Assembly (NCBI RefSeq): GCF_006345805.1
Contig: NC_043005.1
Location: 27,342,001 to 27,406,000, forward strand
Direction: 5' to 3'
Source of the DNA: Octopus sinensis
Taxonomy: Eukaryota
DNA length: 64,000 nucleotides
Shown piece after piece: positions 5,509-63,416 of the stretch (its first letter is position 1; every line of letters begins with the position of its first letter). Both the position numbers and the translations under genes were made by a program. A model generated the notes under the pieces. That model had not been told where the DNA came from. It saw nothing but the letters and a program-made list of their open reading frames with translations, and made no database searches.

Positions 5509-5655
5509 ATTTCGCTTATGCATTACGAAGCTATGTACATATACTTCAGAGCGAAGTGTTAGATGAAGATAGAGAAGTAATAAAAAACTAAAGTGACAAA
5601 GGTATACATGATTATCTATTGAACTTCGTTAGCCTACAACTGTTTTTGCTATGAA

Positions 5656-6135
5656 ATGCATGCATGTATGTATGTATGTATGCATGTATGTATGCATGCA
5701 TGCATGCATGTATGCATGCATGCATGCATGTATGTATGTATGTATGCATGCATGCATGTATGTATGTATGTATGTATGTATGCATGTATGTATGCATGCA
5801 TGCATGCATGTATGCATGCATGCATGCATGTATGCATGCATGCATGTATGTATGTATGCATGCATGCATGCATGTATGTATGCATGTATGCATGCATGTA
5901 TGTATGTATGTATGCATGCATGCATGTATGTATGTATGCATGCATGCATGTATGTATGTATGTATGCATGCATGTATGTATGCATGTATGTATGTATGTA
6001 TGCATGCATGCATGCATGTATGTATGTATGTATGTATGTATGTATGCATGCATTCATGCATGTATGTATGTATGTATGTATGTATGCATGCATGCATGTA
6101 TGTGTGCATGTATGTATGTATGTATGTATGTACGT
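5656..6135. repeat. compound (ATGC/ATGT)n tetranucleotide satellite
   Basis: Direct reading; it is the source of the spurious MHACMYVC ORFs. Confidence 0.95.
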
Positions 6136-6143
6136 ATGCGTAT

Positions 6144-6508
6144 GTGGCTGTATGGTAAGAAGCTTGCTTCCCAACCACATGGGTCCGGGTTTAGTCCCTC
6201 TCCGTGGCACCCTGGGTGTCTTCTACTATAGCCTCGGGTCGACCAAAGCCCTGTGAGTGGATTTGGTAGACGGAAACTGAAAGAAGCCCGTCGTGTGTAT
6301 GTGTGTGTGTATTTGTATGTGTGTTTGTCCCTCTTCCATCGCTTGACAACCGATACTGGTGTGTTTTGCAGATCGGCAAAAAAAAAACCCGATAGAATAA
6401 GTACTAGTCTTACAAAGAATAATTCCTGGGTCGATTTGTTCGACTAAAGGAGGTACTCCAGCATGGTCGCAGTCAAATAACTGAAACAAGTACAAGAATA
6501 AAAGAATA
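6144..6508 (+). mobile_element. tRNA-derived SINE, family A
   Basis: GTGGCTGTATGGTAAGAAGCTTGCTTCCCAACCACATGG...GGATTTGGTAGACGGAAACTGAAAGAAGCCCGTCG, an internal TG/TA tract, and the tail GCAGTCAAATAACTGAAACAAG. Confidence 0.9.
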
Positions 6509-7982: not shown

Positions 7983-8144
7983 TACTACTACTACTACTGT
8001 TGTTGCCCATAATTCTCATACATACACACACACACACATAATACATAATACATACATACATACATACATACATACATACATACATACATACATGCATGCA
8101 TGCATACATACATGCATGCATGCATACATACATACATGCATACA

Positions 8145-8178
<34 letters not shown>

Positions 8179-8210
8179 CATACATACATGCATGCATACA
8201 TACATACATG

Positions 8211-8242
<32 letters not shown>

Positions 8243-8260
8243 CATACATACATGCATATA

Positions 8261-8294
<34 letters not shown>

Positions 8295-8388
8295 CATACA
8301 TACATGCATGCATACATACATACATACATACATGCATGCATGCATACATACATATATACATACATACATACATACATACATACATACA

Positions 8389-8422
<34 letters not shown>

Positions 8423-8555
8423 CATACATACATGCATGCATACATACATACATACATACATACATACATACATACATGCATGCATACATACATACATACA
8501 TACATACATACATACATACATACATACATACATGCATACATACATACATACACAC
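7900..8555. repeat. (TTA)/(CTA) tract followed by a long (ATAC/ATGC)n satellite
   Basis: Direct reading. Confidence 0.95.
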
Positions 8556-9021
8556 GCGGCCAGCACTTTCCTTTCAATTCTGTGACGCATGAACAACGAC
8601 AATCCTCGTTATTGCGTTGTGGCTTTTATTAAAATTCTTATATAAAATACGTTCATTGCATTCGTTTTTACGTCGGTTTTTCCATGCTAGTATGGGTTAA
8701 ATTATATTACTGACGTTTTGGTTTACAGAGGATACACTTTCTGTCGCTTAACACCTATGGACGGCACAAATGTAGTTCCTCAAGGCGAAATATTAAATCA
8801 CTAAGAGTGCTCAACGACTCTAAATAGCACTTGGTGCTATGACTTTATAGATTTCAAGTTACCACATAAAAAATTAGGAGTTTTTGCCAAAAGTTTTTTC
8901 GGGAGACTAAATTACCTTCTGAGCAAATTTTGAAGTAAAAACAATCACTCGCCTAATAACATATTACACGACAGCTGATAACACTTGTGTGTGTGTGTGT
9001 GTGTGTAAAAAATAATGTATA

Positions 9022-9512
9022 GGCGCAGGAGTGGCTGTATGGTAAGTAGCTTGCTTACCAGTCACATGGTTCCGGGTTCAGTCCCACTGTGTGGCACATT
9101 GGGCAAGTGTCTTCTACTATAGCCGCAGGCCGACCAAAGCTTTGTGAGTGGATTTGGTAGATGGAAACTGAAAGAATCCCGTCGTATACATATATGTATA
9201 TGTGTGCGTGTGTATGTATGCATGCATGTATGTATGTATGCATGTATGTATGTATGTATGTATGTATGTATGTATATATGTATGTATGTATGTACATATA
9301 TATGTGTGTATGTTTGTGTGTCTATGGTTGTCCCCAGCCATCGTTTGACAATTGATGCTGGTGTGCTTACGTCCCCGTAACTTAGCAGTTCGGCAAACAA
9401 GACAGATAGAATAAGTATTAGGCTTAGAAAGAATAAGCCCTGGCGCCGATTTGTTTGACTAAAGGCGGTATTCCAGCATGGCCGCAGTCAAATGACTGAA
9501 ACAAATAAAAAA
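9022..9512 (+). mobile_element. SINE family A, full length
   Basis: Starts GGCGCAGGAGTGGCTGTATGGTAAGTAGC, has B-box GGTTCAGTCCC and an internal (ATGT)n tract, and ends CCGCAGTCAAATGACTGAAAC. Confidence 0.9.
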
Positions 9513-12235: not shown

Positions 12236-13883
12236 CCTTTACTGGATACGACGATTTAATTTTAAAATCACTGTAAACATTTCCTACTTTAATAAGATTT
12301 TTATTTTTTTTTTTTTTTCAGCCTGTTTTGATTTGGCCAAGCTCTTAATGTTTGGAGTTAAATTAGTTTCTGAGAGCAGCAGACAATTCTTCGAATTTAA
12401 ATCAGTCAGTCATGACCGCGTTCTGTTTATCTTTTTTATTATTTTTTAAAAATTTTTATCAGCTTCATGGATTAAAATGTTTATTCACCTCTGTAAGCCG
12501 TTTCCAAAACGACAGATGTAAGATTGGGTAAGAATTTTTTATCGACAGAAATTATCATGTCAACAGCATCTGGAACTCAAGGAAATGCATCAGATTTGTT
12601 TTGAAGAATATATTGGATTGTCATAGAAATCCGTTCGCTTTTTTTTTTTTCTTTCCTACTTTGGTGCTTCATCGCCATATCCCTGAAAATAAGTAAAATT
12701 TATTCAAATTCAATAAACAAAAGTTGTAGATGGAGAACAGAGCATAAAAGAAGATACCTTTCGTGTTAATTCAAATAACAGCGGAAAACATTAAAATATG
12801 AAATGGAAAAAGAAAATAAACGAATTTACCTGACAACTCAATATTTGTTTTCAAGCCAGCAAAGTTTCAATCAAATATTACTAGGTCTTTCATGGTATTT
12901 CGATCACTAAGTAAAAATGGGGTTTATAAATGCGAGTCTGTAGACTTAAGCAAAATCACGATAACCACTTTGAAATGACTTAAATAGTTATTTGGAACAG
13001 AAAAGGAAAAAAAAATCATTTTGCAGTCAGAGTGGCCAACTGCCCCGCAGATATGAACATCTCTGCCAAAAATCAGTGTGTAGAAGAATATTTTTGGACA
13101 GCTACTTGGAAACCTCATACTTCCCTATTCAGATTTTAAATTTACATTTATATCAATAATTAATGGTACACTTACCTATTTGTAAATGCTTCAGTGACAG
13201 TCTGGGAATGCTATGATTTTCAAGCGAAGAAAGAGAACAGCTAGCACGCGCTTTTTGTGTTATTTTTTATTGATATTTCCTTCAGAATGAGTACTTATAT
13301 CCCAGTTGTTAGTCCAGGATGAACGACTCTGGTTATTAATGTTGTTATTATTTTGATACTTTCTGACAATGTTATCATACAGAGAATTTTTGTTCCTCTT
13401 CTGGTGACCTGTTTCAGTGGAATTGTGCAACATTTCTGGGTGTATATTCTTGGCCATCACTCGAGGAATGCATTCTGAGAAGCTCCTTTCCAACTTTTGA
13501 TGTATGCAGATTTGATCCGTGGCTGGATTTAGACATTTGATAGTCTGTAAATCTTGTCAAGGGAATACGATGTGCCATTCAAAGGTTACTGGGTCGATGT
13601 TAAGCCTCAATCGCTTTGTTTTCGTTTTAATTAGGGGTAGTCTACATCATTGCTGATGTGGAAATTCGTGATATGTGTTAACAATTTTGGGGTTGTAACG
13701 TCAATATTGAAGATCCCTTCTAGAATTCAAATGTTGAAGAACCCAAACGATGGTATGAACATGGTACAGTAAAATAATTGTGGACTTTTGATTTATTGAA
13801 TGTGAACAATTCCGAGGTTCATCTTTTCTTTATCTTGGTTTTATATTCTCTGGTTAAATGTTCCTTGATACAGATTCCATCAA

Positions 13884-14131
13884 CATTATTTACATTTGAC
13901 AGATATTTGTCCTCATCTTGTTTGTTGTTAACACAACGTTTCGGCTGGTATACCCTCCAGCCTTCATCAGGTGTCTTGGGGAAATGAGGTTCAAAATTTC
14001 CCCAAGACACCTGATGAAGGCTGGAGGGTATATCAGCCGAAATGTTATGTTAACAACAAACAAGATGAGGACAACTATCCGTCAAATGTAAATAATGTAA
14101 ATAATTCCTTATCTCTTAAATATAGAACTGT
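13884..14131. mobile_element. fold-back Penelope-derived non-autonomous element with two outward-facing hammerheads
   Basis: Near-perfect palindrome 13884-14098 with termini CATTATTTACATTTGAC...AAATATAGAACTGT and a 12-bp TSD AGATTCCATCAA at 13872-13883 and 14132-14143. Confidence 0.85.
13930..13975 (-). ncRNA. minimal type I hammerhead ribozyme (intact core)
   Basis: GACAC-CUGAUGA-A-GGCUGG-AGGGUAUA-CCAGCC-GAA-AC-GU-U-GUGUU: stem I 5 bp (one G-U), stem II 6 bp, and a loopless palindromic stem III ACGU. Confidence 0.7.
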
Positions 14132-17117: not shown

Positions 17118-17355
17118 TAATCAGCCGAAATTGCTAAGATGATCTGGTTCTTGACTGATGACTGAGGGCTTCGAATGTCCCGTCCTGTGGTTCTTGTGTC
17201 GTCTCTGTGGTGTTTCATGTTCTTGTCCATGTCTGTAATTATTTTTACTGTTTACCTATATATATATATATATATATACAGGCAGACAGACAGGCAAGCA
17301 GGCAGACAGGTAGATCGATTGATAGGTGCCTATGTCAATATTTATGTATTTGTAA

Positions 17356-17570
17356 GGCGGCGAGCTGACAGAAACGTTAGCACGCCGGGCGAAATACTTA
17401 GCGGTATTTCGTCTGTCTCTACGTTCTAAGTTCAAATTCCGCCGAGATCCACTTTACCTTTCATCCTTTCGGGGTCGATAAATTAAGTACCAGTTGCGTA
17501 CTGGGGTCGATCAAATCGTCTGGCCCCCTTCCTCAAAATTCTTGGGCCTGTGCCAAGAGCAGAAAAGTAT
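17356..17570 (+). mobile_element. SINE family B, CpG-intact
   Basis: GGCGGCGAGCTGACAGAAACGTTAGCACGCCGGGCGAAAT...GTTCAAATTCCGCCGAG...GGGCCTGTGCC. Confidence 0.9.
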
Positions 17571-24422: not shown

Positions 24423-24921
24423 CAACCACATGGTTCCAGGTTCAGTCCCACTGCGTGGCACCTTGGGCAAGTGTCTTCCACTATAACCTCGGGCCGACCA
24501 AAGACCTTGTGAATGGATTTGGTAGACGGAAACTGAAAGAAGCCTGTCGTATATATTTATATGTAGATGTATACATATATACATACATATATATGTATGT
24601 ATGTATGTATGTTGTATGTATGTATGTATGTATGTATGTATGTATGTATATTTATATATATATATAATATATATATACACTCGGAAATGGATGCGTGGCT
24701 TCGATCATATAATAATATAAATAATATATAAGTATATGCATATATACTTACATATTCGTACATACCTACATATATATGTGTATATACATGCATATATGGG
24801 TGCAGTTCCCCCAAAAAAAGTTCGTTTTCTATGTTTTTTATGTCCTGTACCATATATGCATGTATATTAATACATATATATATATAGGTATGTATCTATA
24901 TGTATGTAATTTATATATATT

Positions 24922-24971
<50 letters not shown>

Positions 24972-25195
24972 ATATAGATATATATATAGTTTGTGTGTGT
25001 GTTTGTCCCCCTTCATGCTTGACAACCGAAGTTGTTGTGATTATGTGCCCGTAGCTTAGCGGTTCGGCAAAAGAGACTCATAGGATAAGTACTAGGCTTA
25101 CAGAGAATAAGTCCTGGGATCGATTTGATCGACTAAAGGCGGTGCTCCAGTATGACTGTAGCCAAATGACTGAAACAAATAAAAGAATAAAAGAA
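24423..25195 (+). mobile_element. SINE family A with an expanded internal microsatellite and an inserted fragment
   Basis: The head half is at 24423-24550 and the tail half at about 24990-25195, separated by TA/TG repeats and a fragment of the 4690 element. Confidence 0.8.
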
Positions 25196-26497: not shown

Positions 26498-26844
26498 TCC
26501 TAGAACTTTCAGAATGAATGAGTAGGAAACTACTGCTCCTAACTATAATGACTATACAGTCTGAAATTAACAACAGAACTTGAAGCAATCCAGTGAGCCT
26601 ACACAAATAAAATCATCTCAATGTGATAGATCAACACCTGATAAAGGGCTGAAGATGTTAAAACTCTACTCCCTAGAACAAGGGTGGGAAAGATATGCAT
26701 TGATACACATCTAGAAAACCTTTGAAGGACTTATTCCAAAGTCTGGCATTGAAATTACACAAAGTGCATAACAGGATGCTACTGCTTAGTGTTAAACACC
26801 CCAACATTGCAATCAAAATATGGGACCAGATACTGCAACGGCTG
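26497..26844 (+). mobile_element. degenerate CR1/L2-group LINE, 3' fragment
   Basis: ELEAIQ*AYTNKI and LKMLKLYSLEQGWERYALIHI*KTFEGLIP match the LKLYSLxRRRERYxIIYxWKxxEGLVP pattern of the RT C-terminus. Confidence 0.7.
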
Positions 26845-26944
26845 NNNNNNNNNNNNNNNNNNNNNNNNNNNNNNNNNNNNNNNNNNNNNNNNNNNNNNNN
26901 NNNNNNNNNNNNNNNNNNNNNNNNNNNNNNNNNNNNNNNNNNNN
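26845..26944. other. assembly gap (100 N)
   Basis: Direct reading. Confidence 1.
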
Positions 26945-29216: not shown

Positions 29217-29640
29217 GGAACATTTTGGTTATCTCACCCCCATTAAAAAAATTGGGTCATCTCCCCTCCGTTTTTATGTAAAAATATTGATACTTTTGGT
29301 TATCTCCCTCAACTAAAAAAAGTTGTTTAACCCTCAATAATACAAAGAAAATGAAAAAAATTAATAAACATGAAAGCAAAAAATGAATAAATAAAAAGGA
29401 AAACTGAGAAAATAAAACCTTATTGAATCTCTTTTACTCTTTTACTTGTTTCAGTCATTTGACTGCGGTCATGCTGGAGCACCGCCTTTAGTCGAGCATT
29501 CGACCCCAGGACTTATTCTTTGTAAACCTAGTACTTATTCTATCGGTCTCTCTTGCCGAACCGCTAAGTAACGGGGACGTAAACACACCAGCATCGGTTG
29601 TCAAGCAATGCTAGGGGGACAAACACAGACACATACACGC

Positions 29641-29676
<36 letters not shown>

Positions 29677-29987
29677 ATACATATATACGACGGGCTTCTT
29701 TCAGTTTCCGTCTACCAAATCCACTCACAAGGCTTTGGTCGGCCCGAGGCTATAGTAGAAGAAACTTGCCCAAGGTGCCACGCAGTGGGACTGAACCCGG
29801 AACCATGTGGTTGGTAAACAAGCTACTTACCACACAGCCACTCCTTGATATTTTTATAACAAATCCTGTATTGAATGAAAAGGATCTAACACTTTTTATC
29901 CAATCTCTTGTTGCCACGTAAACTCAACTTTTAAGCAGGAAGATAGCCCAATTTTTTAATGGGGGTGAGATAACCAAAAAAGTACCC
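29217..29987. mobile_element. TIR MITE (20307 family) interrupted by a young SINE
   Basis: Both TIRs are present, and the internal sequence is the reverse complement of 20380-20520. Confidence 0.8.
29431..29845 (-). mobile_element. young SINE family A
   Basis: Full body with CpGs intact; nearly identical to 62861-63274. Confidence 0.9.
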
Positions 29988-34617: not shown

Positions 34618-34941
34618 CATTATTTACATTTGACGGATATTTGTCCTCATCTTGTTTGTTGTTAACACAATGTTTCGGCTGATATACCCTCCAGCCTTCA
34701 TCAGGTGTCTTGGGGAAATTTCGAACCTGGGTTCTCATTCCTAAGGTATGTTGTTACAGCAACAAACAACGACGACGACGAAAAATACCTTAGGAATGAA
34801 AACCCAGGTTCGAAATTTCCCCAAGACACCTGGTGAAGGCTGGAGGGTATATCAGCCGAAACGTTGTGTTAACAACAAACAAGATGAGGACAAATATCCG
34901 TCTAATGTAAATAATTCCTCATCTCTTAAATATAGAACTGT
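34618..34941. mobile_element. fold-back hammerhead element (second copy)
   Basis: Same termini as 13884-14131, longer arms and an AAC/GAC-rich spacer, with a 12-bp TSD AAGAATAAATAA at 34606-34617 and 34942-34953. Confidence 0.85.
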
Positions 34942-40368: not shown

Positions 40369-40782
40369 TCAACTCCGAATTGTCTCTCTCTTCAGGGAAA
40401 GTGGTTCAGACATCATCACTGGCTTTTGTAGAATGAGCAGTTCACTTTTGTCGGCAAATCTCTGTAGGGCGTCGTATTTTTGTCGCAATGAGTCCAGTTC
40501 CATTTTGACCACGTTGTTCTCTCGTTGCAGCCGGTACACCTCGGCCCGTAGCTTTTCTCTCTCAATTTCCAACTCCTCTTTCTGTGATATCCGCTTCTCA
40601 CGGCAGTTGGCAGCATAGCCTCTGTTCTTCAGTGTACGTCGACGCTGCTTTAGACGCGACACTTGCTCTCTGGTGAGACCCTTCACTACTTGGTTTAGTT
40701 CTTTCACAGTGAGTCGGACAAGTTCATCATCGGACAAGTCAAACAGGCGAGCGTTGTCCGATTTGACTTGCGATAGGAAAAT
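40369..40782 (-). CDS. MAFK: small-Maf-type bZIP transcription factor, terminal coding exon (extended homology region, basic region, leucine zipper)
   Basis: [31 protein letters not shown]...[29 protein letters not shown]...KYDALQRFA. The GYAA/QKEELE/KY.ALQ.FA residues match small Mafs rather than large Mafs (GYAQ, QRH.LE). The zipper has L/L/L/V/L/L heptads. Acceptor CTCTCTTTGTAG| is phase 0 and the stop is TGA at 40369-40371. Which small Maf it corresponds to is not resolvable. Confidence 0.93.
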
Positions 40783-40913
40783 CTACAAAGAGAGAGAGAG
40801 AAAGAGAAAAAATAAGGAATTGATGAGAAATTAAAAAAAAACAAAACAAATAAATTAAAATAGAATAATTAATACAGATTAATAAACAAAGCAGAATAAT
40901 GTTCATAATTTAA

Positions 40914-41142
40914 TTCTTTATTGCCCACAGGAGGCTAAACAAAGTGGGGACAAACAAGGACAGACAAAGGGATTAAGTCGATTACATCGAACCCCAGTGT
41001 GTAACTGGTACTTATTCAATTGACCCCGAAAGGATAAAAGGCAAAGTGAACCTCAGCAGAATTTGAACTCAGGACATAACAGCAGACGAAATACGACTAA
41101 GCATTTCGCCCGGCGCGCTAACGACTCTGCCAGCTCACTGCC
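40914..41142 (-). mobile_element. SINE family B in the last Maf intron
   Basis: Family B body with the alternative tail GTCTGTCCTTGTTTGTCCCC...GTGGGCAATAAAGAA. Confidence 0.85.
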
Positions 41143-41452
41143 CTTATAATGTTTATAATAATAATTTCTTATATTTAGCCAAACATTTCATTAGAGACAA
41201 TATCAGTGAAATACCTGGGTCAATGACATTCAAACTGGTTATTTGATTGTTACATATTGAGATAAGCTGGTTTTGAAATCATAATGTAAAGGAACAACAA
41301 CAACAACTATGTTCTAAATTAGGCAAAAGAGGGACGGTGAGACATTTACATAATCAAGTAGCCTTTTTCTGGATGCAGTCTAAGATTTGTGTGTGTGTAG
41401 CAGCGGCAGCACTGTTCCAATTGTAAGAGCAAATACCCTTTATAGATCTCAC

Positions 41453-42209: not shown

Positions 42210-43255
42210 GGTGGTGAGCTGACAGAAACATTAGCACACCAGACAAAATGCTTGGAAGCATTTTCTCCAACTTTATTTAATAATAATAATATGAATAAGA
42301 ATAAGAATAATGATGATGATGATAATCCTCTCTACTATAGGTACAACGCCTGAAATTTCTGAGAAGGGAAATAGTCAATTACATCAACCCCAGTGTTCGA
42401 CTTTGGTGAGATTTGAACTCAGGAAGTAAAGTCAGAAGTAATAGCCATTAAGAATTTTGTCTGCTGCGCTGACAATTCTGCAAGTTTACCATCAAACAAC
42501 AGTGCTTAATAATTGACATGGCAGTGCCAGGAGATCAACATATCATCAGGAAAGAAAGAGAAAAGGTTGATAAATATTGACACCTGAGAACTGAGATAGT
42601 TAAGATGTGGCAGCTACGAGGGTCAAACATAAAAGTTATTGTTATCGGAGCATTGGGTTCAATACCACCCAATCTGGAAAAACATCTGGAAACTTTAGAA
42701 ATACCCTACAATCTAGATGTATTGCAAAAGTCAGCATTACTTACTTGGAACTGCACACATATTGCGTAAAGTACTGTCTGTCTGAGGTCCTTGTTATGAC
42801 TTGACAAACAGTACAAACCCCCTGGTGGACACAATATCTTCAATGAACAACCTCACAATATTGTATACTGTGTGACCCCAGTGTTCAATTGGTACTTATT
42901 TTATCGACCCCAAAAGAATAAAAGGCAAAGTTGATCTTGGCGGAATTTGAACTCAGAACGTAGCAATGGGCAAAATACTGCTAAGCATTTTGCCCAGTGT
43001 GCTAACAATTCTGCCAGCTTGCCACCTTAATAATAATAATAACAACAACAATTCTTTATACTATAGGCACAAGGTGTGAAATTTGTGGTGAACTCTTAGG
43101 GTTAACCCTAACCCTAATGAATCAGATTAACTTTAATGCTCAGCTGGTACTTTTTTTTTTTGTCCCTGCAAGGACGAAACGCAAAGTCAACTTCAGTGGC
43201 ATTTGAACTCAGAATGTAAAGCACTGGAAAGAAATGACACTAACGACTCCACTAA
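42210..43255. mobile_element. cluster of CpG-decayed SINE family B fragments
   Basis: Heads and bodies at about 42210 (+), 42340 (-), 42875 (-) and 43040 (-), each adjacent to (TTA)n. Confidence 0.75.
42491..42870 (+). mobile_element. RLE-type LINE 3' end (a second, divergent family)
   Basis: CLIIDMAVPGDQHIIRKEREKVDKY*HLRTEIVKMW...VIVIGALGSIP...LQKSALL..GTAHILRKVLSV*. Confidence 0.8.
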
Positions 43256-43799: not shown

Positions 43800-43844
<45 letters not shown>

Positions 43845-43845
<1 letters not shown>

Positions 43846-44035
43846 AAAGGTAAGACAACAAAAGAATGAAAGAAACCTCAATATTATGAAAATAGAGGAA
43901 TTTATCTGTAAATGTAAAATGTGACAATTATTGGGTAGCCATGATAAAACTTCGAGTTTCGGATATCGGGGTGGAAATCTACGTCAACATCTCTTCAGTT
44001 ATCTAGCTACCTATGGCCAGTAACTGAAGAGATAC
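43845..44035 (-). mobile_element. Penelope-like terminal repeat with a truncated inverted copy
   Basis: Contains a hammerhead and a 12-bp inverted repeat TCTCTTCAGTTA/TAACTGAAGAGA; a T-rich 3' end on the minus strand runs into (TA)n. Confidence 0.6.
43943..44003 (-). ncRNA. type I hammerhead ribozyme
   Basis: GAUAA-CUGAAGA-GAUGUUG-(16-nt loop)-CGAUAUC-C-GAA-ACU-CGA-AGU-U-UUAUC: stem I 5 bp, stem II 7 bp with one extra C, stem III 3 bp, GUU triplet. Predicted cleavage is between 43948 and 43947. Confidence 0.72.
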
Positions 44036-44147
44036 ATATATGTGTGTGTGTGTGTATATATAAATATATATATTACATATAGGGTTCTCGTTGGATGTTT
44101 GGTTCAAGAATTTTCATGTGTGAGTGTGTACATACACACACCCATAC

Positions 44148-44192
<45 letters not shown>

Positions 44193-44219
44193 TATAAATA
44201 TATATATATATATATACAC

Positions 44220-44735
44220 ATCTATGTATTTGTGTGCCTGTGTCTGTCCTTCTACCATCGCTTGACAACCGACGTTGGTGTGTTTACGTCCCTGTTACTT
44301 AGCAGTTCGGCAAAAGGGACTGATAGAATAAGTACCAGGCTTACAAAGACTGAGTCCTGGGGTCAATTTGTTCAACTGAAAGGCAGTGCTCCAGCATGGC
44401 CACAGTCAAATGCCTGAAGCAAGTAAAAGAATGAGTGAAGGCATGGTTGTGTGATTAAGCAGTTCACTTCGCAACCCCATGGTTTCAGGATCAGTCTCAC
44501 TACACAGCACCTTCAGCACTTTTTTTTTTCTCAACTATAGTCCTCAGTTGACCAACAACCTTGCAATTGAATTTGAGTGATGGAAACTGTATGGATGCTC
44601 ACTGTGCTTCTGTGTGCATATGGTTGAGCTCCACACTGCTTAATAATGGGAGCTGGTTTATTTATGCCCTAATAACCCTTCAAAGCAGTACACTAGCATG
44701 GTCGCAGTCTAATGAATGTAACAAGTAGAGGAATG
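44220..44735 (+). mobile_element. two tandem decayed SINE family A pieces
   Basis: A tail half at 44220-44430, then a second degenerate copy from about 44436. Confidence 0.7.
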
Positions 44736-44904
44736 AAAGAATACTGCGCATGTGTGTGTGCAAATATATATACATATTTGTTATATTTGGGGGTAGTTTT
44801 TTTTTTATTGCCAAATAACCATACGCACTATATACTCATTCTATATACTCACACTATATACTCATTCTTCACTTCACCTTTATTATTATTATTATCATTA
44901 TTAA

Positions 44905-45115
44905 GGTGGTGAGCTGGCAGAATAGTTATCACGCCAGGTGAAATGCTTGGCGGTATTTTGTCTGCCGCTACATTCTGAGTTCAAATTCTGCCGAAGTTGA
45001 CATTGCCTTTCTTCCTTCTGGGGGTCAATGAAATAAGTACCAGTTGAGCACTGGGGTCAATGTAATCAACTCATCCCCACCTCCCCAAACTGCCCTTGTG
45101 GCAAAAATTTGAAAT
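44905..45115 (+). mobile_element. SINE family B
   Basis: GGTGGTGAGCTGGCAGAATAGTTATC... preceded by (TTA)n. Confidence 0.8.
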
Positions 45116-47250: not shown

Positions 47251-47923
47251 TAGAAATAACAATAATAATAATGATAATATCATAAATAATTAATAATAAT
47301 AATAATTGCTGCTATTCTTCTTATTATTGCTGTTGTTGTTATTATTTTCAAAATACTGGGTTAATTTCCAAAATTACTCTTAATTATTTCTCTAATTAGC
47401 AACTTTTTCCAATGTTTAATGCAGTCTTGGGTATTTATATTTGTGTGTGTGTGTGTGTGTGTGAGTGTGTATGCACATGCGCACACACATATGATCTATT
47501 TCAGAAATTTCTTATACATTTTCAGCAAACAGCAACAAATATCAGAAAGGGGGTCAGGGGTCATATGTGAGTTGATAAAATGACAAAGGAAACAAACAAA
47601 TGACAAAACTTAATAATTTTAAAACTGTTTTGAACTTTGCAAAGCTGCTCAATGCTTTTGTAAACAGAAGAAGAATTAAATGGTTACAAACTATCTTCTC
47701 TTCTCACTTGTATATTATGCATACACATGTAGATTATACATACATACATATATACACACACATACATACACACACATATATACAGATGTATTCACACACA
47801 CATATATATATATACACACACCTACACGTATATATACACACACCTGATGATGATATCAGAGATACATATAAGATGAAACACATTTTAGAGACAGAGTTGC
47901 TGTATAATCAATATTTTATATTA

Positions 47924-47969
<46 letters not shown>

Positions 47970-47970
<1 letters not shown>

Positions 47971-48009
47971 TAGATAGATAGATAGATAGCTAGATAGATA
48001 GATAGCTAA

Positions 48010-48106
<97 letters not shown>

Positions 48107-48152
48107 AAGGAAGATAGATAGATATAAAGAGATAGATAGATAAATAGAAAGG

Positions 48153-48185
<33 letters not shown>

Positions 48186-48414
48186 GATAGACAGACAGAC
48201 AGATAGATAGATATAAAGAGATAGATAGATAAATAGAAAGGAAGATAGATAGATAAATAGATAGATAGATAGAAAGGAAGATAGATAGATAAATATAAAG
48301 AGACAGATAGATAAATAGATAGATAGATAGATAGAAAGGAAGATAGATAGATAGATATAAAGAGATAGATAGATAGATAGATAGAGAAATAGATAGATAT
48401 AAAGAGATAGATAA

Positions 48415-48475
<61 letters not shown>

Positions 48476-48560
48476 AAGGAAGATAGATAGATAAATAGAT
48501 AGATATAAAGAGATAGATAGATAGATAAATAGATAGATAGATGGATGGATAGATATGATG
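47970..48560. repeat. long interrupted (GATA)n satellite
   Basis: Direct reading; it has recurring GAAAGGAA and ATATAAAGA interruptions. Confidence 0.95.
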
Positions 48561-48930
48561 TATAGAGATAGATGTACAGACAACTGAGCATAAAACAATC
48601 TGAATTAATGATGACTGCAACAAGAAGAAGGAAACAGCTTGTGATAAGCTGTATTGCAGGATGACCAGATCTCATTGGTTGCAAGCAATAAAAGAAGAGT
48701 CTAAGTAATATATGTAAAGCAATTTGTACTCAATCATATATTTAAAAAAAATAAAAGAAGAAAGAAGTGAAATAAAAAAAATATTTAAAAAAAAAAACGG
48801 AGAAAAGAACCCCTAAAATCAAATTGCACTGTTGATGCACCGCCCCAATTGCACTAGTTGCTCTCTCATTTAAATATGTAAATGAGGGAACATTGAACAG
48901 TAGGAGGGAAATTGTATTGTGTGCCATGCA

Positions 48931-50275: not shown

Positions 50276-50713
50276 TACATATATGCACATAAATAGACAC
50301 ACATATACACAAATATATATACATATTAATTAGTGATTGATAATTAATTACAATGAACTTATTGTATATAATGCTTGGGTATTAGTAAACACACACACAC
50401 AAGTATATACATCCTTATTTTACAGTTATGATGTACATATATATATTTAGGTGTATATCTCTCTCTATATATATGTGTGTGTATGTATATAAATAAGTAT
50501 ACATATGTGTGTGTGTGTGTGTGTGTGGTGTGTGTGTGTGTGTGCACACATGCACAACTTACAGAAACCAATTTTTAGAAAAGGCACAATCTGCTCTTGC
50601 CTGTTTTTATGGGTGACAAAACTGGTTTCTAACATCAAGGGTAATCTGGTTATGGAACACTGTTGCAGAAGACACTCCGAGACTAAAACAATGCTAAATT
50701 ACGTCTAGGTTAA

Positions 50714-51110
50714 GGCGGCGAGCTGGCATAGACGTTAGCGCCCCGGGCGAAATGCTTAGCGGTATTTCGTCTGACGTTACGTTCTGAGTTCAAATTCCGC
50801 CGAGGTCGACTTTGCCTTTCATCCTCTCGGGGTCGATAAATTAAGTACCAGTTAAACACTGGGGTCGATGTAATCGACTTAATACCTATGTCTGTCCTTG
50901 TTTGTCCCCTCTGTGTTTAGCCCCCTGTGGGTAATAAAGAAATAGGTATTTCGTCTGTCTTTATGTTCTGAGTTCAAATTCCGCCGAGGTCGACTTTGTC
51001 TTTCATCCTTTTGGGGTCATTAAATTAAGTACCAGTTGTGTACTGGGATCGATCTAATCGACTGGACCCCTCCCCAAATTTGTCGGATCTTGCGCCTAGA
51101 GTAGTAAAGA
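50714..51110 (+). mobile_element. young CpG-intact SINE family B plus a tandem 5'-truncated copy with a different tail
   Basis: GGCGGCGAGCTGGCATAGACGTTAGCGCCCCGGGCG... runs to 50943, and a second body starts GGTATTTCGTCTG at about 50945. Confidence 0.85.
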
Positions 51111-51383: not shown

Positions 51384-52139
51384 GAGAAAGAGAGAGAGAA
51401 AGACTAACAAATGAATGCATATACATAGATTATATATATACATATATATATATATATATACTACATACATTCACGCACACACATGTATATGCATTCATAT
51501 ACAAAGATATGTACATATATGTATATGTATGCATGTTTACAGTTTGTATGTATGAGCATGCACCCATGCACGCACACACACACACACACATTCAGAGACG
51601 GGCTGATAATTTGTCAAGATATAGAGATAGATAAAATAGATAAACAGACAGAAAGACAGTAAGCAAGAGCTGCAATATATAGTGTGATATGATGTATGGA
51701 GAAGGAGGGGTTGGGGGGGGGGGAGGATGACAGTAGATGTGGCAAGGCGCTGGTGATGGTGATGGTGGTGGTGGTGATGGAGGGGGAGAAGTTGAAGTGG
51801 CAATGTAATTAAATGATAGCTTATTAGTGAAATCATGTAATTATCTAAACACCATATGTGTTACACAAGGAAACTAAAATTTGAGATAAAAACACAGGGA
51901 GGAGGAGGAGGGAGAGAGATGACAGACAAAGAAAAAGTTTAGGTTTATGAAGATTTAATAATAATAATGATAATAATAATAATAATAATAATAATGTTTT
52001 CCTAACAGAAATGATTTATGCCCCATTAATACGTACATGTTCATACATGCTTACATATAGCATTCTACACTGCAATCTTTTAGCATGTGCCCATGCTGGA
52101 GCCATGCTTTGAAGGGACTTCAATCAATTGTATCTCCTG

Positions 52140-52224
52140 ATACATACAGACACACACACACACATATATGTATATACACACACACATATATATATAACAC
52201 ACACACACACATATATACACACAC

Positions 52225-52255
<31 letters not shown>

Positions 52256-52760
52256 TATATACGCACACATATATATATATACACACACACATATATATAT
52301 ATACACACACACACATATATATATATACACACACACACACACATATATATATACACACACACACACACATATATATATACACACACACACACACATATAT
52401 ATATACACACACACACACACACATATATACACACACACACACACACATATTATATACACACACACACACATATATATTACACACACACACACACACATAT
52501 ATATACACACACACCACACACATATATATTACACACACACACACATATATATATACACACACACACACACATATATATATACACACACACACACACACAT
52601 ATATATACACACACACACACACACATATATATACACACAACACACACACATATTATATACACACACACACACACATATATATACACACACACACACACAC
52701 ACATTATATATATATATATATATATACATACACACATATTTACACACACATATAAGAATA
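52140..52760. repeat. alternating (CA)n/(TA)n compound microsatellite
   Basis: Direct reading. Confidence 0.95.
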
Positions 52761-54439
52761 AAGTAAATAAATAGGCCCATATATAACTGGGTCCAGGAGC
52801 AATTTTTTTTTATTTTGGAAAGCAGTAATTAGCCTGCAACCTATTTTATTGCTGTCTGTTTACTAAATTGCTAAGTTCACCTTGGTATAAAGGTATTTAA
52901 CTCGGTACAGAAAACCATTAGGTACTTCAGTGCAACAGATTCACTCACATACCAAATTTTCTAAATCATTGGTGACCCCCAAAGCCATTTTGAGACACTT
53001 GTCTAAGTTACTGACTGTACAACAAAATCAAACAGAGGACCAGATAATTTGAAGCGAATGACCTTAGTAACATGAAATATATTATCTGCAACGTGGATAA
53101 AATTGAAATTTAGTGAAGAACTATTTAAATAGCATATTAGCAACAAACATTCCTGTCCCATCACGGGGCCAAAGTTTTAACTTGCTCAGGTCCTAGTTTT
53201 ACAAGAAGCAACAACAAAAGTACCATATTTAGTCATATACCATGCCCCAAATTTAGTGTTAAATCTTGGTACAAATTTTTTTCGCTTCATAGTTTTAGCT
53301 TTGCCTCAATAATAAATTGCATCCTGGTTTTTTTCTTCAATTTTTTCTTTTAAATTGTGTATAATAACTGTAACAACAGCAGTTTGGATGCCGACCAAAA
53401 CTCTTTTTTTTGTCCCCTCCTTACCTCCATATGCTATAAACTGAATCAAGACAATAAACTGTAGTCAGAATAATTAACAGAAACCAATTAATTAACACGA
53501 TATTCTGATGAATACGGAGAATTAATTAAAAATAATTGTTTAATTATATAGATAAATATAAACAGACATCTATGCAGACACAAACATCAGCAGACATGCA
53601 TCCACATAATTGTTAACACTGTTTGGTTTTGTTTTTTCCTAACCACCAAAACGCTGAATCTAGACCCAGGTGTGTGAAGGCATCAGGAAACACACACACA
53701 CACACAAGAACAGGGCGTTAAACAGTTTCCTGGTTGGTCTACCCTTTTCATTCTTCAGTGATTATTAAGAAGCTGATGAGTTTAGTATCCCCTACAGTAG
53801 TAATTCCCAAACTGATAAATACAGGGCATCCCTAATCCCTTCACAAAATACTACTAAAATTTATTAACGAGTCGGCTTCTACAAAATTCTTCAGTAATTA
53901 CAATGATGTTGGACAAGTTTATATCTAAAACTAGCTAAACTTATTTTAATATATGGTAATTTGTCAGCCCACTTTATACTCCTTACTAATATCATCATCA
54001 TCATCATCATATGAAATGCTGTCCTATACAGCAGGACAGAGAAATTTATTTGTAGCAGCAAGCATTATCAGACATTTTACTCATCATAAATTGTTCGACA
54101 ACACTAAAATATAATTATTAACCAACAACCTAGTACAGGACAGACAACATTATATATACTTAAGTCATTCATAAAAATATATTTATGCCACAGCTAAGAT
54201 TTAAGTGACAAAATTTTAATCAAAATTCATATTTACATCATAATATTAAGAGTCCCTACATCATATACATACATATGTGTATGTGTGTGTGTATACATAT
54301 ACATGTGTGTGCGTGTGTGTATGCAAACATGAAGAGGTGCATGTGGACCAAGTACCCACAGGTTACCCGTTGTTGTTCCACACAATGGGTCACAATGAAG
54401 TATACACATTTATTCTACACTTCTGTAAACACACACATA

Positions 54440-55991: not shown

Positions 55992-56408
55992 GGTGCTGGA
56001 GTGGCTATGTGGTAAGTAGCTTGCTTACCAACCACATGGTTCCAGGTTCAGTCCCACTGCATGGCACCTTAGGCAAATGTCTTCTACTATAGCCTTGAGC
56101 CAACCAAATCCTTGTGAGTGGATTTGGTAGAGGGAAACTAAAAGCCTGTCGTGTATATATATATATATATATATTGTATGTATGCATGTGTATATGCTTG
56201 TGTGTCTGTGTTTGTACACGCCGCCCCCCAACATCACTTGACAACTGATGCTGGTGTGTTTATATCCCTGTAACCATAGCAGTTTGGCAAAAGAGACCAA
56301 TAGAATAAGTACTCAGCTTACAAAGAATAAGTCCTGAGGTCAATTTTCTCGACTAAAGGCAGTGCTCCAGCATGGCCGCAGTCAAATGACCAAAACAACC
56401 AAAAGAAT
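55992..56408 (+). mobile_element. SINE family A, CpG-decayed
   Basis: Full body with CG changed to TG/CA throughout. Confidence 0.85.
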
Positions 56409-59964: not shown

Positions 59965-60865
59965 ATGTTTAGTGTCATTTTGTCTGTCTTTAGATTCCGA
60001 GTTCAAATTTCACTGAGGCTGATTTTGCCCTTCATCCTTTAAGGGTCGATAAAATAAAGTACCAGTTAAGTACTGGGGGTTGATGTAACTGACTTCCATC
60101 CCCATCCCACTCAAAAACTACTGGCCCTGTGCTAAAATTTGAAGCCATTATTAATATTGCTCGTGACAAGCCAACAGAATCGTTAACAACATCAGGCAAA
60201 ATGTTTAGCAGCATTTCGTCATTAAGTTCCAAGTTCAAATTCCACCAAAGTCGACTTTACCTTTCATCCTTTTGGGGTCAATAAATTATGTACCAGTGAG
60301 ATACTGAGGTCAATGTAATTGACTTAACCCCTCCCCTGAAATTGCTGGCCTTGTGTCAAAATTTGAAATTATTATTATCTTTATTATTATTATTATTATT
60401 ATTATTAAAAAAGCAGCGAGCTGGCAGAATTGTTAGCACATAGGATGAAATGCTTAGCAGTATTTTGTCTGTTTTTAGGTTCTGAGTTCAAATTCCACCA
60501 AGGTTGACTTTGCCTTTTATCTTTTCAGGGTCAATAAATTAAGTAGCAGTTGATTGTTGGGGGTCGATGTGATTGACTGTCCCCCTCCCCACAAAATCTA
60601 GGCCTTGTACCTATGGTAAAAAGGATTATCATCATCATCATCATTATTATAAGGTGGCTAGCTGGCAGAATCATTAGCACACTGGGCAAAATGCTTGGTG
60701 GCATTTCATCTACTGCTACGTTCTGAGTTCAAATTCCGCCAAGGTTGACTTTGCCTTTCATCCTTTCAGGGTCGATAAAATAAATACCAGTCAAACACTG
60801 GGGTTGATGTAACAGACTTAAGCCCTCCCCCAAAATGGCTGCCCTTCTGGCAGAATATGAAACCA
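59965..60865 (+). mobile_element. array of four consecutive SINE family B copies
   Basis: Four GTTCAAATT..C/TTTCATCC/AAGTACCAG bodies separated by (TTA)/(ATC) tracts. Confidence 0.8.
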
Positions 60866-61890: not shown

Positions 61891-62104
61891 ATCCTTTCTA
61901 CTATAGGCAGAAGGTCTGAAATTTATGGAGAGAGGGTAAGTCGATCACATTGACCCCAGTATGCAACTGGTACTTAATTTATCAACCCCGAAAGGATCAG
62001 AAGCAAAGTCAACCTCGGCAGAATTTGAACCCACAACATGATGACAGTTGAAATACTGCTAAACATTTTGCCCGGCATGCTAACGATTCTGCCAGCTCAC
62101 CACC
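61891..62104 (-). mobile_element. SINE family B
   Basis: Full body, with (AAT)n/(GAT)n on both plus-strand flanks. Confidence 0.85.
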
Positions 62105-62293
62105 TTAATAATAAAAATAATAATAAGAAGAAGAATAACAACAACAACAAGAGCAACAAGCAGTTGTAATTAGTGAAAGAAGCAAAATGACTAGTCCTGT
62201 GCTTGCATGTGTATGTATGCATGCATGAATGAATGCATGTGTGTGCTTATATGTAAGAACATGTATTGATGTGTGTGTGAGCGTATGTGTGTA

Positions 62294-62769: not shown

Positions 62770-63075
62770 CAGTCTTCCCTCAACTATCGTGAGTGTTACA
62801 TTCCAAACCCAACCCCGCTACGATAGGTGAAAATTTAAAAATTAGAAACAGTACAGTACTCTCTCTCCTTCTCTCTCTTTTACTTGTTTCAGTCATTTGA
62901 GTGCGGCTATGCTGGAGCACCGCCTTTAATCGAGCAACTCGGCCCCGGGACTTATTCTTTGTAAGCCCAGTACTTATTCTATCGGTCTCTTTTGCCGAAC
63001 CGCTAAGTGACAGGGACATAAACACACCAGCATCGGTTGTCAAGCAATGCTAGGGGGACAAACACAGACACACAA

Positions 63076-63108
<33 letters not shown>

Positions 63109-63416
63109 CATATATACGACGGGCTTCTTTCAGTTTCCGTCTACCAAATCCACTCACAAGGCTTTGGTCGGCCCGAGGCTATAGTAGAAGACACTTGCCC
63201 AAGGTGCCACACAGTGGGATTGAACCCGGAACCATGTGGTTGGTAAACAAGCTACTTACCACACAGCCACTCCTTACTGTATATTTTTTCTTCTTTTTTT
63301 TTATAATTTGTATATATTTATTTTATCATAAACGCAAAACAACACCACGGAGGATTCGACGTAAGCTTACATAATAAACCGCGATAGGTGAACTGCAATA
63401 TGGTGAGGGATTACTG
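62770..63416. mobile_element. Tigger/pogo-like MITE (11651 family) interrupted by SINE A
   Basis: Left TIR CAGTCTTCCCTCAACTATCG and right TIR GAGGGATTACTG followed by TA. Confidence 0.7.
62861..63274 (-). mobile_element. young SINE family A
   Basis: CpG-intact and nearly identical to 29431-29845; possible 4-bp TSD TACT at 62857-62860 and 63275-63278. Confidence 0.9.

What the first reader, a model, noticed from the sequence alone, without database searches (positions are those of the whole stretch)
43943..44003. Complete type I hammerhead on the sense strand of the Maf locus, probably intronic
Seen: all three stems and the canonical core are present on the minus strand: GAUAA/UUAUC, CUGAAGA, a 7-bp stem II, GAA, ACU/AGU closed by a 3-nt loop, and a GUU triplet. 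Unlike the other motifs here, stem III has a loop, so it could fold as a monomer. It retains four CpGs in about 40 bp inside an otherwise CpG-poor domain, so it is young or constrained. It lies about 2.3 kb upstream of the probable first coding exon, on the same strand. Established: intronic hammerheads derived from retroelements are known in vertebrates (e.g. in RECK). Inference: if the Maf pre-mRNA spans this site, co-transcriptional self-cleavage could affect splicing or output of a dosage-sensitive transcription factor.
Basis: partly seen in the sequence, partly recalled or inferred. Interest (0 to 1): 0.8.

Follow-up and report, generated by a model that had tools for sequence, protein, structure and literature searches.

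The report
Lone hammerhead look-alike in MafK intron
A 61-base stretch in the last intron of an octopus MafK gene does spell a complete hammerhead ribozyme motif, but every test I could run suggests an inactive look-alike (chance or a dead retroelement relic), not a ribozyme that regulates the gene.

Summary
It has a full CUGANGA/GAA core, helices of 5, 7 and 3 bp, a GUU cleavage triplet and one extra C next to G12. It lies on the sense strand of a small-Maf (MafK) gene, deep in the last intron. The "first coding exon 2.3 kb downstream" is not supported.

A motif this good is expected by chance in about one 64-kb window in a thousand, so tens per octopus genome.

Evidence against an active ribozyme:
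- No Rfam hammerhead model scores it, even at E<=10 on 89 bases.
- The hammerhead fold is 4.5-7 kcal/mol worse than the best fold of the isolated motif.
- It is about 16-17 kcal/mol worse once the upstream 18-bp hairpin is included. That hairpin buries the whole CUGAAGA box and is transcribed first.
- There is no second copy and no tandem or retroelement context.
- It shows no homology to the four Penelope-type minimal hammerhead arms elsewhere in the window.
- The four CpGs are not unusual.

Conservation in other octopods, the decisive test, could not be run.

Verdict: an inactive look-alike. I put chance at about 0.5, a dead or weak retroelement relic at about 0.45, and a domesticated regulator at about 0.03. 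Interest is low.

The parts
43943..44003 (-). Helix I 5' arm 44003-43999; CUGAAGA 43998-43992; helix II 43991-43985 with 43968-43962; loop 2 43984-43969; extra C 43961; GAA 43960-43958; helix III ACU 43957-43955, loop CGA 43954-43952, AGU 43951-43949; U17 43948; helix I 3' arm 43947-43943.
   Evidence: Read directly. Recovered by my own descriptor as the only three-helix hit in the window.
43934..44011 (-). Extended motif of 78 nt. After an internal loop (UA 44005-44004 opposite AUG 43942-43940), helix I is closed by six Watson-Crick pairs, GGUAGC 44011-44006 with GCUACC 43939-43934.
   Evidence: a closing stem of 6 bp or more has P about 0.016 for random flanks; the hammerhead fold is -11.7 kcal/mol against an MFE of -19.1 for an alternative rod-like fold; z = -2.6 for the MFE.
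43989..44033 (-). Competing 45-nt hairpin. The 5' arm is 44033-44016 and the 3' arm 44007-43989, with a 13-bp perfect inverted repeat plus 5 more pairs and an 8-nt loop. It pairs the helix I 5' arm, the entire CUGAAGA box and the first 3 nt of helix II with upstream sequence.
   Evidence: 13 nt, 100% complementary; region MFE -30.5 kcal/mol, z = -3.7; the hairpin alone is -24.0 kcal/mol.
40369..40784 (-). Last coding exon of a small Maf (MafK) gene, encoding residues [15 protein letters not shown]...RETIRS and the stop codon. The splice acceptor AG is at 40784-40783. The motif lies 3.16 kb upstream on the same strand.
   Evidence: tblastn gives 137/137 identity to XP_052827328.1-type MafK (P0003).
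44035..44250 (.). (TG)n/(TA)n microsatellite directly upstream of the hairpin on the minus strand. It belongs to the tail of a SINE-like repeat at about 44148-44441.
43800..43850 (.). (TA)n microsatellite. It bounds the roughly 185-bp single-copy block that holds the motif on its other side.
   Evidence: The block has no other copy in the window.

Best explanation
The sequence is hammerhead-shaped but does not work as a ribozyme in the MafK pre-mRNA.

Shown: the motif is present, and it lies in the last intron on the sense strand.

Inferred: as the intron is transcribed, the upstream arm 44033-44016 pairs with 44007-43989. This makes an 18-bp hairpin that locks away the helix I 5' arm and the whole CUGAAGA box before helix II, helix III and the cleavage site have been made. 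The remainder settles into a rod-like fold. The three-way junction is therefore essentially never populated, and the intron is spliced out and degraded like any other.

Origin is unresolved. It is either a chance assembly in an AT-rich, palindrome-rich intron (about 0.5) or a solitary, decayed copy of a retroelement hammerhead (about 0.3). Both give the same functional outcome: no meaningful self-cleavage and no effect on MafK dosage.
For: 1. No Rfam hammerhead model (Hammerhead_1, _3, _II, HH9, HH10) matches. This holds at gathering score, at E<=10 in a 551-nt scan, and at E<=10 in an 89-nt scan.
2. The isolated 61-nt motif folds no better than shuffles: MFE -6.5 kcal/mol, z = +0.25. The hammerhead secondary structure itself is only -2.0 kcal/mol, with Boltzmann weight 4e-5.
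3. Even with the extra closing stem, the hammerhead fold is -11.7 against an MFE of -19.1 kcal/mol.
4. In native context the hammerhead-constrained ensemble has probability 1e-10 to 1e-13. The cause is the -24 kcal/mol hairpin, which lies 5' of the rest of the motif and so forms first.
5. There is an extra nucleotide on the 3' side of helix II, next to G12. Natural Penelope-type hammerheads carry their unpaired base on the 5' side, between A9 and G10.1 (PMC4209133). Loop 2 is 16 nt, and no loop1-loop2 contact of the canonical kind is recognisable. Hammerheads without such contacts are poor catalysts at physiological Mg2+ (PMC6155905, PMC4209133).
6. It is solitary. There is no second copy and no tandem or inverted partner in 64 kb. 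A profile of the four genuine Penelope-type hammerhead arms in the window does not find it (nhmmer --max, E<=100; pairwise alignments).
7. Motifs of equal quality arise with decoy cores at about 1e-3 per window. The field's own reviews warn that minimal-motif searches yield mostly false positives (PMC6155905).
8. The CpG cluster is unremarkable.
Against: - The motif is the best non-palindromic hit among 540 core permutations in the real window.
- It keeps every conserved core base.
- It has the G after A9 and a C before G12, and C15.2-G16.2.
- It has a long helix II (7 bp), a short helix I (5 bp), an internal loop and a 6-bp closing stem. Those proportions resemble Penelope-type hammerheads (PMC4209133).
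- Real hammerhead relics are demonstrably present in this window, and Rfam misses those too. The Rfam negative is therefore weak evidence.
- Nearest-neighbour energies ignore tertiary stabilisation of the hammerhead core.
- Cross-species conservation was not tested.
Confidence: 0.78

Rival explanations
1. It is a genuine, catalytically competent type I hammerhead left by a fairly recent retroelement insertion (Penelope-like element or non-LTR retrozyme lineage). It can cleave slowly, at least in vitro as an isolated transcript of about 80 nt, but it is a passenger in the intron with little or no effect on MafK.
For: - The core and all three helices are complete.
- There is an extra closing stem beyond an internal loop in helix I.
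- Helix proportions resemble Penelope-type hammerheads: helix II 7-8 bp, helix I 4-5 bp (PMC4209133).
- The chance expectation is only about 1e-3 per window.
- The window holds four arms of a real Penelope-type hammerhead family.
- The block is flanked by (TA)n and (TG)n microsatellites, which are preferred Penelope-like element targets (PMC8557442).
- Most such hammerheads occur as single, truncated copies (PMC4209133).
- The four CpGs are intact, whereas two of the four other arms have lost the one in GAAACGUU.
Against: - No homology to the resident hammerhead family or to any other sequence in the window.
- No reverse transcriptase or GIY-YIG ORF nearby.
- The unpaired base is on the wrong side of helix II, and helix III plus its loop is not palindromic.
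- The hammerhead fold is not the MFE even in isolation.
- Bona fide Penelope-type hammerheads themselves cleave poorly in vitro (PMC4209133).
- Microsatellites are everywhere in this window, so the flanks say little.
Confidence: 0.18
2. It is a domesticated intronic hammerhead, analogous to the amniote RECK/CTCL ribozymes. Regulated self-cleavage of the MafK pre-mRNA would tune splicing or output. The upstream hairpin could act as an off-switch that sequesters the catalytic box.
For: - It is on the sense strand and intronic.
- The core is complete.
- Precedent exists for conserved intronic type I hammerheads (PMC6155905).
- The alternative hairpin overlaps the core in a way that could in principle be a switch.
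Against: - No conservation data at all.
- No match to the HH9 or HH10 models, or to any other hammerhead model.
- None of the canonical tertiary-contact architecture is visible.
- The inactive fold is favoured by more than 15 kcal/mol.
- The site is embedded between microsatellites and SINE-like repeats, which is typical of neutrally evolving intron.
Confidence: 0.03

Closest known systems
Minimal hammerheads of Penelope-like elements (Cervera & de la Pena 2014, PMC4209133)
   Same: - Type I topology.
[quoted passage not shown]
- G10.1 and C11.1 identities, and C15.2-G16.2.
- Usually found as solitary, truncated copies.
- Low intrinsic activity.
- Bona fide examples of this kind sit in the same window at 13883-14098 and 34619-34915.
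   Different: - Penelope-type motifs have no helix III, or a tiny palindromic one, and act as dimers. This motif has a 3-bp helix III with a non-palindromic 3-nt loop.
- Their unpaired base lies between A9 and G10.1. Here the extra C is on the 3' side, next to G12.
- They occur in families with covariation. No second copy was found here, and there is no homology to the resident family.
Canonical metazoan type I hammerheads in non-LTR retrozymes and satellite repeats (Cervera & de la Pena 2020, PMC7229834; Rfam RF00163)
   Same: - Type I topology and the same core.
- Short helix III closed by a small loop.
- Low-GC context.
   Different: - Canonical motifs have helix I of about 6 bp and helix II of about 4 bp, with conserved loop1-loop2 contacts.
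- They sit in tandem repeats of 150-450 bp.
- Here helix II is 7 bp with a 16-nt loop, there is no tandem repeat, and RF00163 gives no match even at E<=10.
Amniote intronic hammerheads HH9 and HH10 (RECK, CTCL; Rfam RF02275, RF02277; reviewed in PMC6155905)
   Same: - Sense-strand, intronic position in a protein-coding gene.
- Type I topology.
- Presumed retroelement ancestry.
   Different: - Those are ultraconserved across birds and mammals, keep the canonical tertiary contacts, and cleave efficiently.
- This one has no conservation evidence, no match to either model, and an unfavourable fold.
Engineered minimal hammerhead (core plus three short helices, no peripheral loops)
   Same: A complete core with helices and no evident tertiary contact. 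If it cleaved at all, this is how it would behave: slow and dependent on high Mg2+.
   Different: Engineered versions have no insertion at the helix II-G12 junction and no competing structure. This one has both.

Membership tests
Hammerhead ribozyme (any type) | Conserved core: C3 U4 G5 A6 N7 G8 A9, G12 A13 A14, A15.1-U16.1, H17 (not G) | tested here: met
   CUGAAGA, GAA, A15.1/U16.1 and U17 were read directly and recovered by the descriptor.
Hammerhead ribozyme (any type) | Three helices radiating from the core, with helix II abutting A9 and G12 directly | tested here: inconclusive
   Complementarity exists for 5, 7 and 3 bp. An extra C (43961) lies between helix II and G12, or bulges one pair in. 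Helix III is only 3 bp with a triloop.
Hammerhead ribozyme (any type) | The hammerhead fold is thermodynamically accessible | tested here: not met
   The hammerhead fold is -2.0 against an MFE of -6.5 kcal/mol for 61 nt, and -11.7 against -19.1 for 78 nt. P(hammerhead) is 1e-10 to 1e-13 with native flanks. Caveat: tertiary energy is not modelled.
Hammerhead ribozyme (any type) | Site-specific self-cleavage 3' of H17 | not testable with these tools
   This needs in vitro transcription and a cleavage assay.
Rfam hammerhead families (RF00163, RF00008, RF02276, RF02275, RF02277) | Covariance-model score at or above the gathering threshold | tested here: not met
   No hammerhead hit at gathering score, nor at E<=10 on 551 nt or 89 nt. 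The same models also miss the Penelope-type copies in the window.
Canonical metazoan type I hammerhead / non-LTR retrozyme | Located in tandem repeats of 150-450 bp, with helix I of about 6 bp, helix II of about 4 bp and conserved loop1-loop2 contacts | tested here: not met
   There is no tandem or second copy. Helix II is 7 bp with a 16-nt loop.
Penelope-like-element minimal hammerhead | Unpaired nucleotide between A9 and G10.1; palindromic 15.2-16.2 and loop 3; membership of a multi-copy consensus family with covariation; located in pLTRs or truncated Penelope-like element copies | tested here: not met
   The extra base is on the 3' side. ACUCGAAGU is not a palindrome. No family member was found in the window, and an nhmmer profile of the resident family gives nothing. 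No Penelope-like element ORF is nearby. Genome-wide copy number is untestable here.
Domesticated intronic hammerhead (HH9/HH10-like) | Conservation at the orthologous intron position across species | not testable with these tools
   Ortholog gene ranges are 128-153 kb, over the 100-kb retrieval limit, and no nested or neighbouring gene gives access. Metagenome scans found nothing.
Domesticated intronic hammerhead (HH9/HH10-like) | Sense-strand position inside an intron of the host gene | tested here: met
   It is on the same strand as the MafK last exon and 3.16 kb upstream of its acceptor. Gene models of 128 kb or more place the upstream exons far beyond it.

The most novel reading that the evidence does not exclude
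A cephalopod-specific, domesticated intronic hammerhead in the last intron of MafK. Its catalytic box would be masked by an upstream hairpin acting as a conformational switch, so that regulated self-cleavage tunes output of a dosage-sensitive bZIP factor. This would be the first conserved intronic ribozyme outside amniotes.
Probability: 0.03. Interest if true: 0.7.

Novelty: not a real feature. Interest (0 to 1): 0.15.

Why it matters
If the motif were an active, conserved intronic ribozyme, it would extend the RECK/CTCL type of domesticated hammerhead to molluscs and link RNA self-cleavage to a stress-response transcription factor.

As it stands, the value is cautionary. A textbook-complete hammerhead core with three helices turns up at about one per thousand 64-kb windows in this kind of AT-rich, palindrome-rich DNA. 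Such motifs should not be read as ribozymes without family, covariation or cleavage evidence.

The genuinely informative hammerheads in this window are the four Penelope-type arms at about 13.9 kb and 34.7 kb. They are ordinary retroelement debris.

Tried and rejected
1. Rfam at three stringencies and window sizes gave no hammerhead hit. A scan over the Penelope-type copies shows Rfam misses those as well, so I did not treat this negative as decisive.
2. I looked for orthologous DNA through MafK proteins of O. vulgaris/sinensis, O. bimaculoides and Argonauta. All gene ranges exceed the retrieval limit.
3. Exact look-ups of exon-only ORFs and of a neighbouring 92-aa ORF are not on record.
4. 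Cluster membership revealed no short genomic contigs.
5. Two metagenome scans, with a 24-mer and with a gapped core pattern, found nothing.
6. I tested kinship with the resident hammerhead family. Local alignments gave one weak reverse-strand similarity to the family tail (p = 0.003-0.03 over 8 tests). This disappeared with a profile search (nhmmer --max), so I rejected it.
7. I considered a tRNA-Phe-like origin, because CUGAAGA equals that anticodon loop. ARAGORN finds no tRNA in the window, and there is no anticodon-stem complementarity, so I rejected it.
8. I tested CpG retention as a sign of constraint. Such clusters are common here, so I rejected it.
10. A literature search for hammerheads in octopus found only general Penelope-like element surveys and a count of 235 Rfam Hammerhead_1 hits in the giant squid genome.

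Full report
**1. What is there**

On the minus strand, 44003..43943 reads GAUAA-CUGAAGA-GAUGUUG-(16 nt)-CGAUAUC-C-GAA-ACU-CGA-AGU-U-UUAUC. This is a type I hammerhead layout.
- Helix I is 5 Watson-Crick bp, helix II is 7 bp (two G.U), and helix III is 3 bp with a triloop.
- Every conserved core base is present, with C15.2-G16.2 and a GUU cleavage triplet.
- One extra C (43961) lies between helix II and G12. It can also be drawn as G10.1-C11.1 followed by a bulged C.
- My own descriptor scan returns this as the only three-helix hammerhead on either strand of the window.
Beyond a 2x3-nt internal loop, helix I continues for six more Watson-Crick pairs, GGUAGC 44011-44006 with GCUACC 43939-43934. 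That gives a 78-nt unit.

**2. Genomic setting**

- ORF 40369-40737 extends to a splice acceptor at 40784/40783. It encodes 137 residues that are 100% identical to the C-terminal 137 residues of MafK from Octopus bimaculoides, O. sinensis/vulgaris and Argonauta hians.
- The gene is therefore a small Maf (MafK) on the minus strand, and the motif is on its sense strand, 3.16 kb upstream of the last exon.
- NCBI gene models for this 141-155-aa protein span 152.6, 128.8 and 127.7 kb in O. vulgaris, O. bimaculoides and Argonauta. The upstream exon(s) therefore lie far away, and the motif is deep in the last intron.
It matches no MafK isoform and should be dropped.
- The motif sits in a single-copy block of about 185 bp (43850-44033). 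A (TA)n run bounds one side, and the (TG/TA)n tail of a SINE-like repeat (about 44148-44441, many copies in the window) bounds the other.

**3. Is it more than chance?**

- First-order Markov windows give 1 hit in 4000. Real DNA is richer in stems, so I used a second null: the same structural descriptor run on the real window with permuted core sequences.
- 3 of 539 permuted cores give a hit.
- Ranked by total base pairs, the true-core motif is the best hit outside the two large palindromes.
- With 30,720 GC-matched decoy cores, 29 reach the same quality, mostly inside microsatellites.
- The chance rate is therefore about 1e-3 per 64-kb window. That is notable for a single window, but it means tens of such look-alikes in a 2.7-Gb genome.
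- For scale, Rfam finds 235 Hammerhead_1 loci in the giant squid genome (PMC6962438), about 5e-3 per window. Real and chance motifs therefore have comparable base rates.
- Reviews of the field warn that searches with minimal motifs return mostly false positives (PMC6155905).

**4. Tests of ribozyme character**

- *Rfam.* No hammerhead family matches at gathering score, at E<=10 in 551 nt, or at E<=10 in 89 nt. This is weak evidence on its own, because the same models miss the Penelope-type copies in the window.
- *Isolated fold.* The 61-nt motif has an MFE of -6.5 kcal/mol, no better than shuffles (z = +0.25). That MFE pairs G12-A13-A14 with the U run after the cleavage site. The hammerhead structure itself is -2.0 kcal/mol. 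For the 78-nt unit the hammerhead is -11.7 against -19.1 for a rod-like alternative.
- *Fold in context.* A 13-bp perfect inverted repeat, extended by five more pairs, forms a 45-nt hairpin at 44033..43989 with -24.0 kcal/mol. It pairs the helix I 5' arm, the whole CUGAAGA box and the start of helix II with upstream sequence. The region's MFE is -30.5 kcal/mol with z = -3.7. With native flanks, the ensemble probability of the hammerhead junction is 1e-10 to 1e-13.
- *Order of transcription.* Both hairpin arms are transcribed before helix II's 3' strand, helix III and the cleavage site. The trap is therefore kinetic as well as thermodynamic (inference).
- *Tertiary contacts.* No canonical loop1-loop2 contact is recognisable, and loop 2 is 16 nt. 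Hammerheads without such contacts are poor catalysts at cellular Mg2+ (PMC6155905, PMC4209133).

**5. Relation to the other hammerhead motifs in the window**

- A core-only scan and inspection show two palindromic insertions, 13883-14098 and 34619-34915.
- Each of their four arms carries CCCCAAGACAC-CUGAUGA-A-GGCUGG...CCAGCC-GAAAC|GUU-GUGUU.
- These show the hallmarks of Penelope-like-element minimal hammerheads: an unpaired base between A9 and G10.1, G10.1-C11.1, a palindromic ACGU with no helix III loop, and inverted 5'-truncated copies (PMC4209133, PMC8557442).
- They are decaying. The CpG in GAAACGUU is lost in two arms, and one arm has CUGGUGA.
- The candidate is not one of them. A profile of the four arms finds nothing else in the window at E<=100 with all filters off. 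Pairwise alignments are not significant after correcting for multiple tests.
- The candidate shares the proportions of Penelope-type hammerheads (long helix II, short helix I, closing stem). It differs in the side of the unpaired base and in having a non-palindromic helix III hairpin.

**6. CpGs**

Four CpGs lie within 30 nt. Windows of 40 nt with at least 4 CpGs occur in 58 clusters across the window and at 1.2% of positions in the intronic part. This does not indicate youth or constraint.

**7. What could not be done**

The decisive in silico test is presence and covariation at the orthologous intron position in other octopods. It was not possible.
- The ortholog gene ranges exceed the retrieval limit, and no nested or neighbouring gene gives access.
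- Exon-only and neighbouring ORFs are not on record.
- Metagenome scans were empty.
- Genome-wide copy number of the 185-bp block is likewise unknown.

**8. Verdict**

The functional reading is not.
- Most likely (about 0.78) the sequence never acts as a ribozyme in the MafK transcript. Within that, I cannot separate pure chance (about 0.5 overall) from a dead relic of a retroelement hammerhead (about 0.3).
- A weakly active passenger hammerhead is possible (about 0.18).
- A domesticated regulator is unlikely (about 0.03).

Known kinds cover every reading. Interest is low unless conservation or cleavage data say otherwise.

Noticed in passing
window 13883-14098 and 34619-34915: Two near-perfect palindromic insertions (arms of 103 nt at 95% and 134 nt at 96% complementarity). 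Each arm carries a Penelope-type minimal hammerhead: CUGAUGA-A-GGCUGG...CCAGCC-GAAAC|GUU, with no helix III loop. The arms show CpG decay at GAAACGUU, and one arm has a mutated core (CUGGUGA at about 34830). Rfam hammerhead models miss them; they score only as spurious miRNA hairpins.
   Followed up: partly
window 43989-44033: A 45-nt hairpin made of a 13-bp perfect inverted repeat plus 5 more pairs (-24 kcal/mol). It abuts the microsatellite tail of a SINE-like repeat. Its origin is unexplained; it could be a truncated palindrome or chance.
   Followed up: partly
window 44148-44441; copies at 24909-25188, 62867-63116, 29438-29687, 9200-9510, 56155-56408 and 6308-6499: A SINE-like dispersed repeat of about 250-300 bp, 76-83% identical between copies, with a (TA/TG)n tail. 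No tRNA-like head was detected by ARAGORN.
   Followed up: no
window 42873-43220 and 44880-45115; copies at 60474-60804, 40976-41165, 50710-50879, 61939-62129, 17342-17508 and others: A second dispersed repeat family of about 170-350 bp, 73-82% identical between copies. Two copies sit in opposite orientation about 1.7 kb apart and bracket the region that holds the motif. One copy lies just upstream of the MafK last exon.
   Followed up: no
window 40369-40784 (-): The last coding exon of MafK is identical at protein level across Octopus species and Argonauta. The whole gene spans 128-153 kb for a 141-155-aa product. No other convincing coding exon was seen in the 64-kb window.
   Followed up: partly
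window 26845-26944: A run of 100 N, which is an assembly gap.
   Followed up: no
whole window, for example 5650-6150, 8050-8600, 47900-48700 and 52080-52770: Very abundant (TA)n, (TG)n and (CATA)n-type microsatellites. They generate hundreds of spurious sub-threshold Rfam hits (mir-297, mir-466, mir-3149) and long pseudo-ORFs.
   Followed up: no
window 26649-26690 (+): Another CUGAAGA ... GAA half-motif with a 4-bp helix II and no helices I or III. This is consistent with the chance expectation of about 1.2 half-motifs per window.
   Followed up: yes
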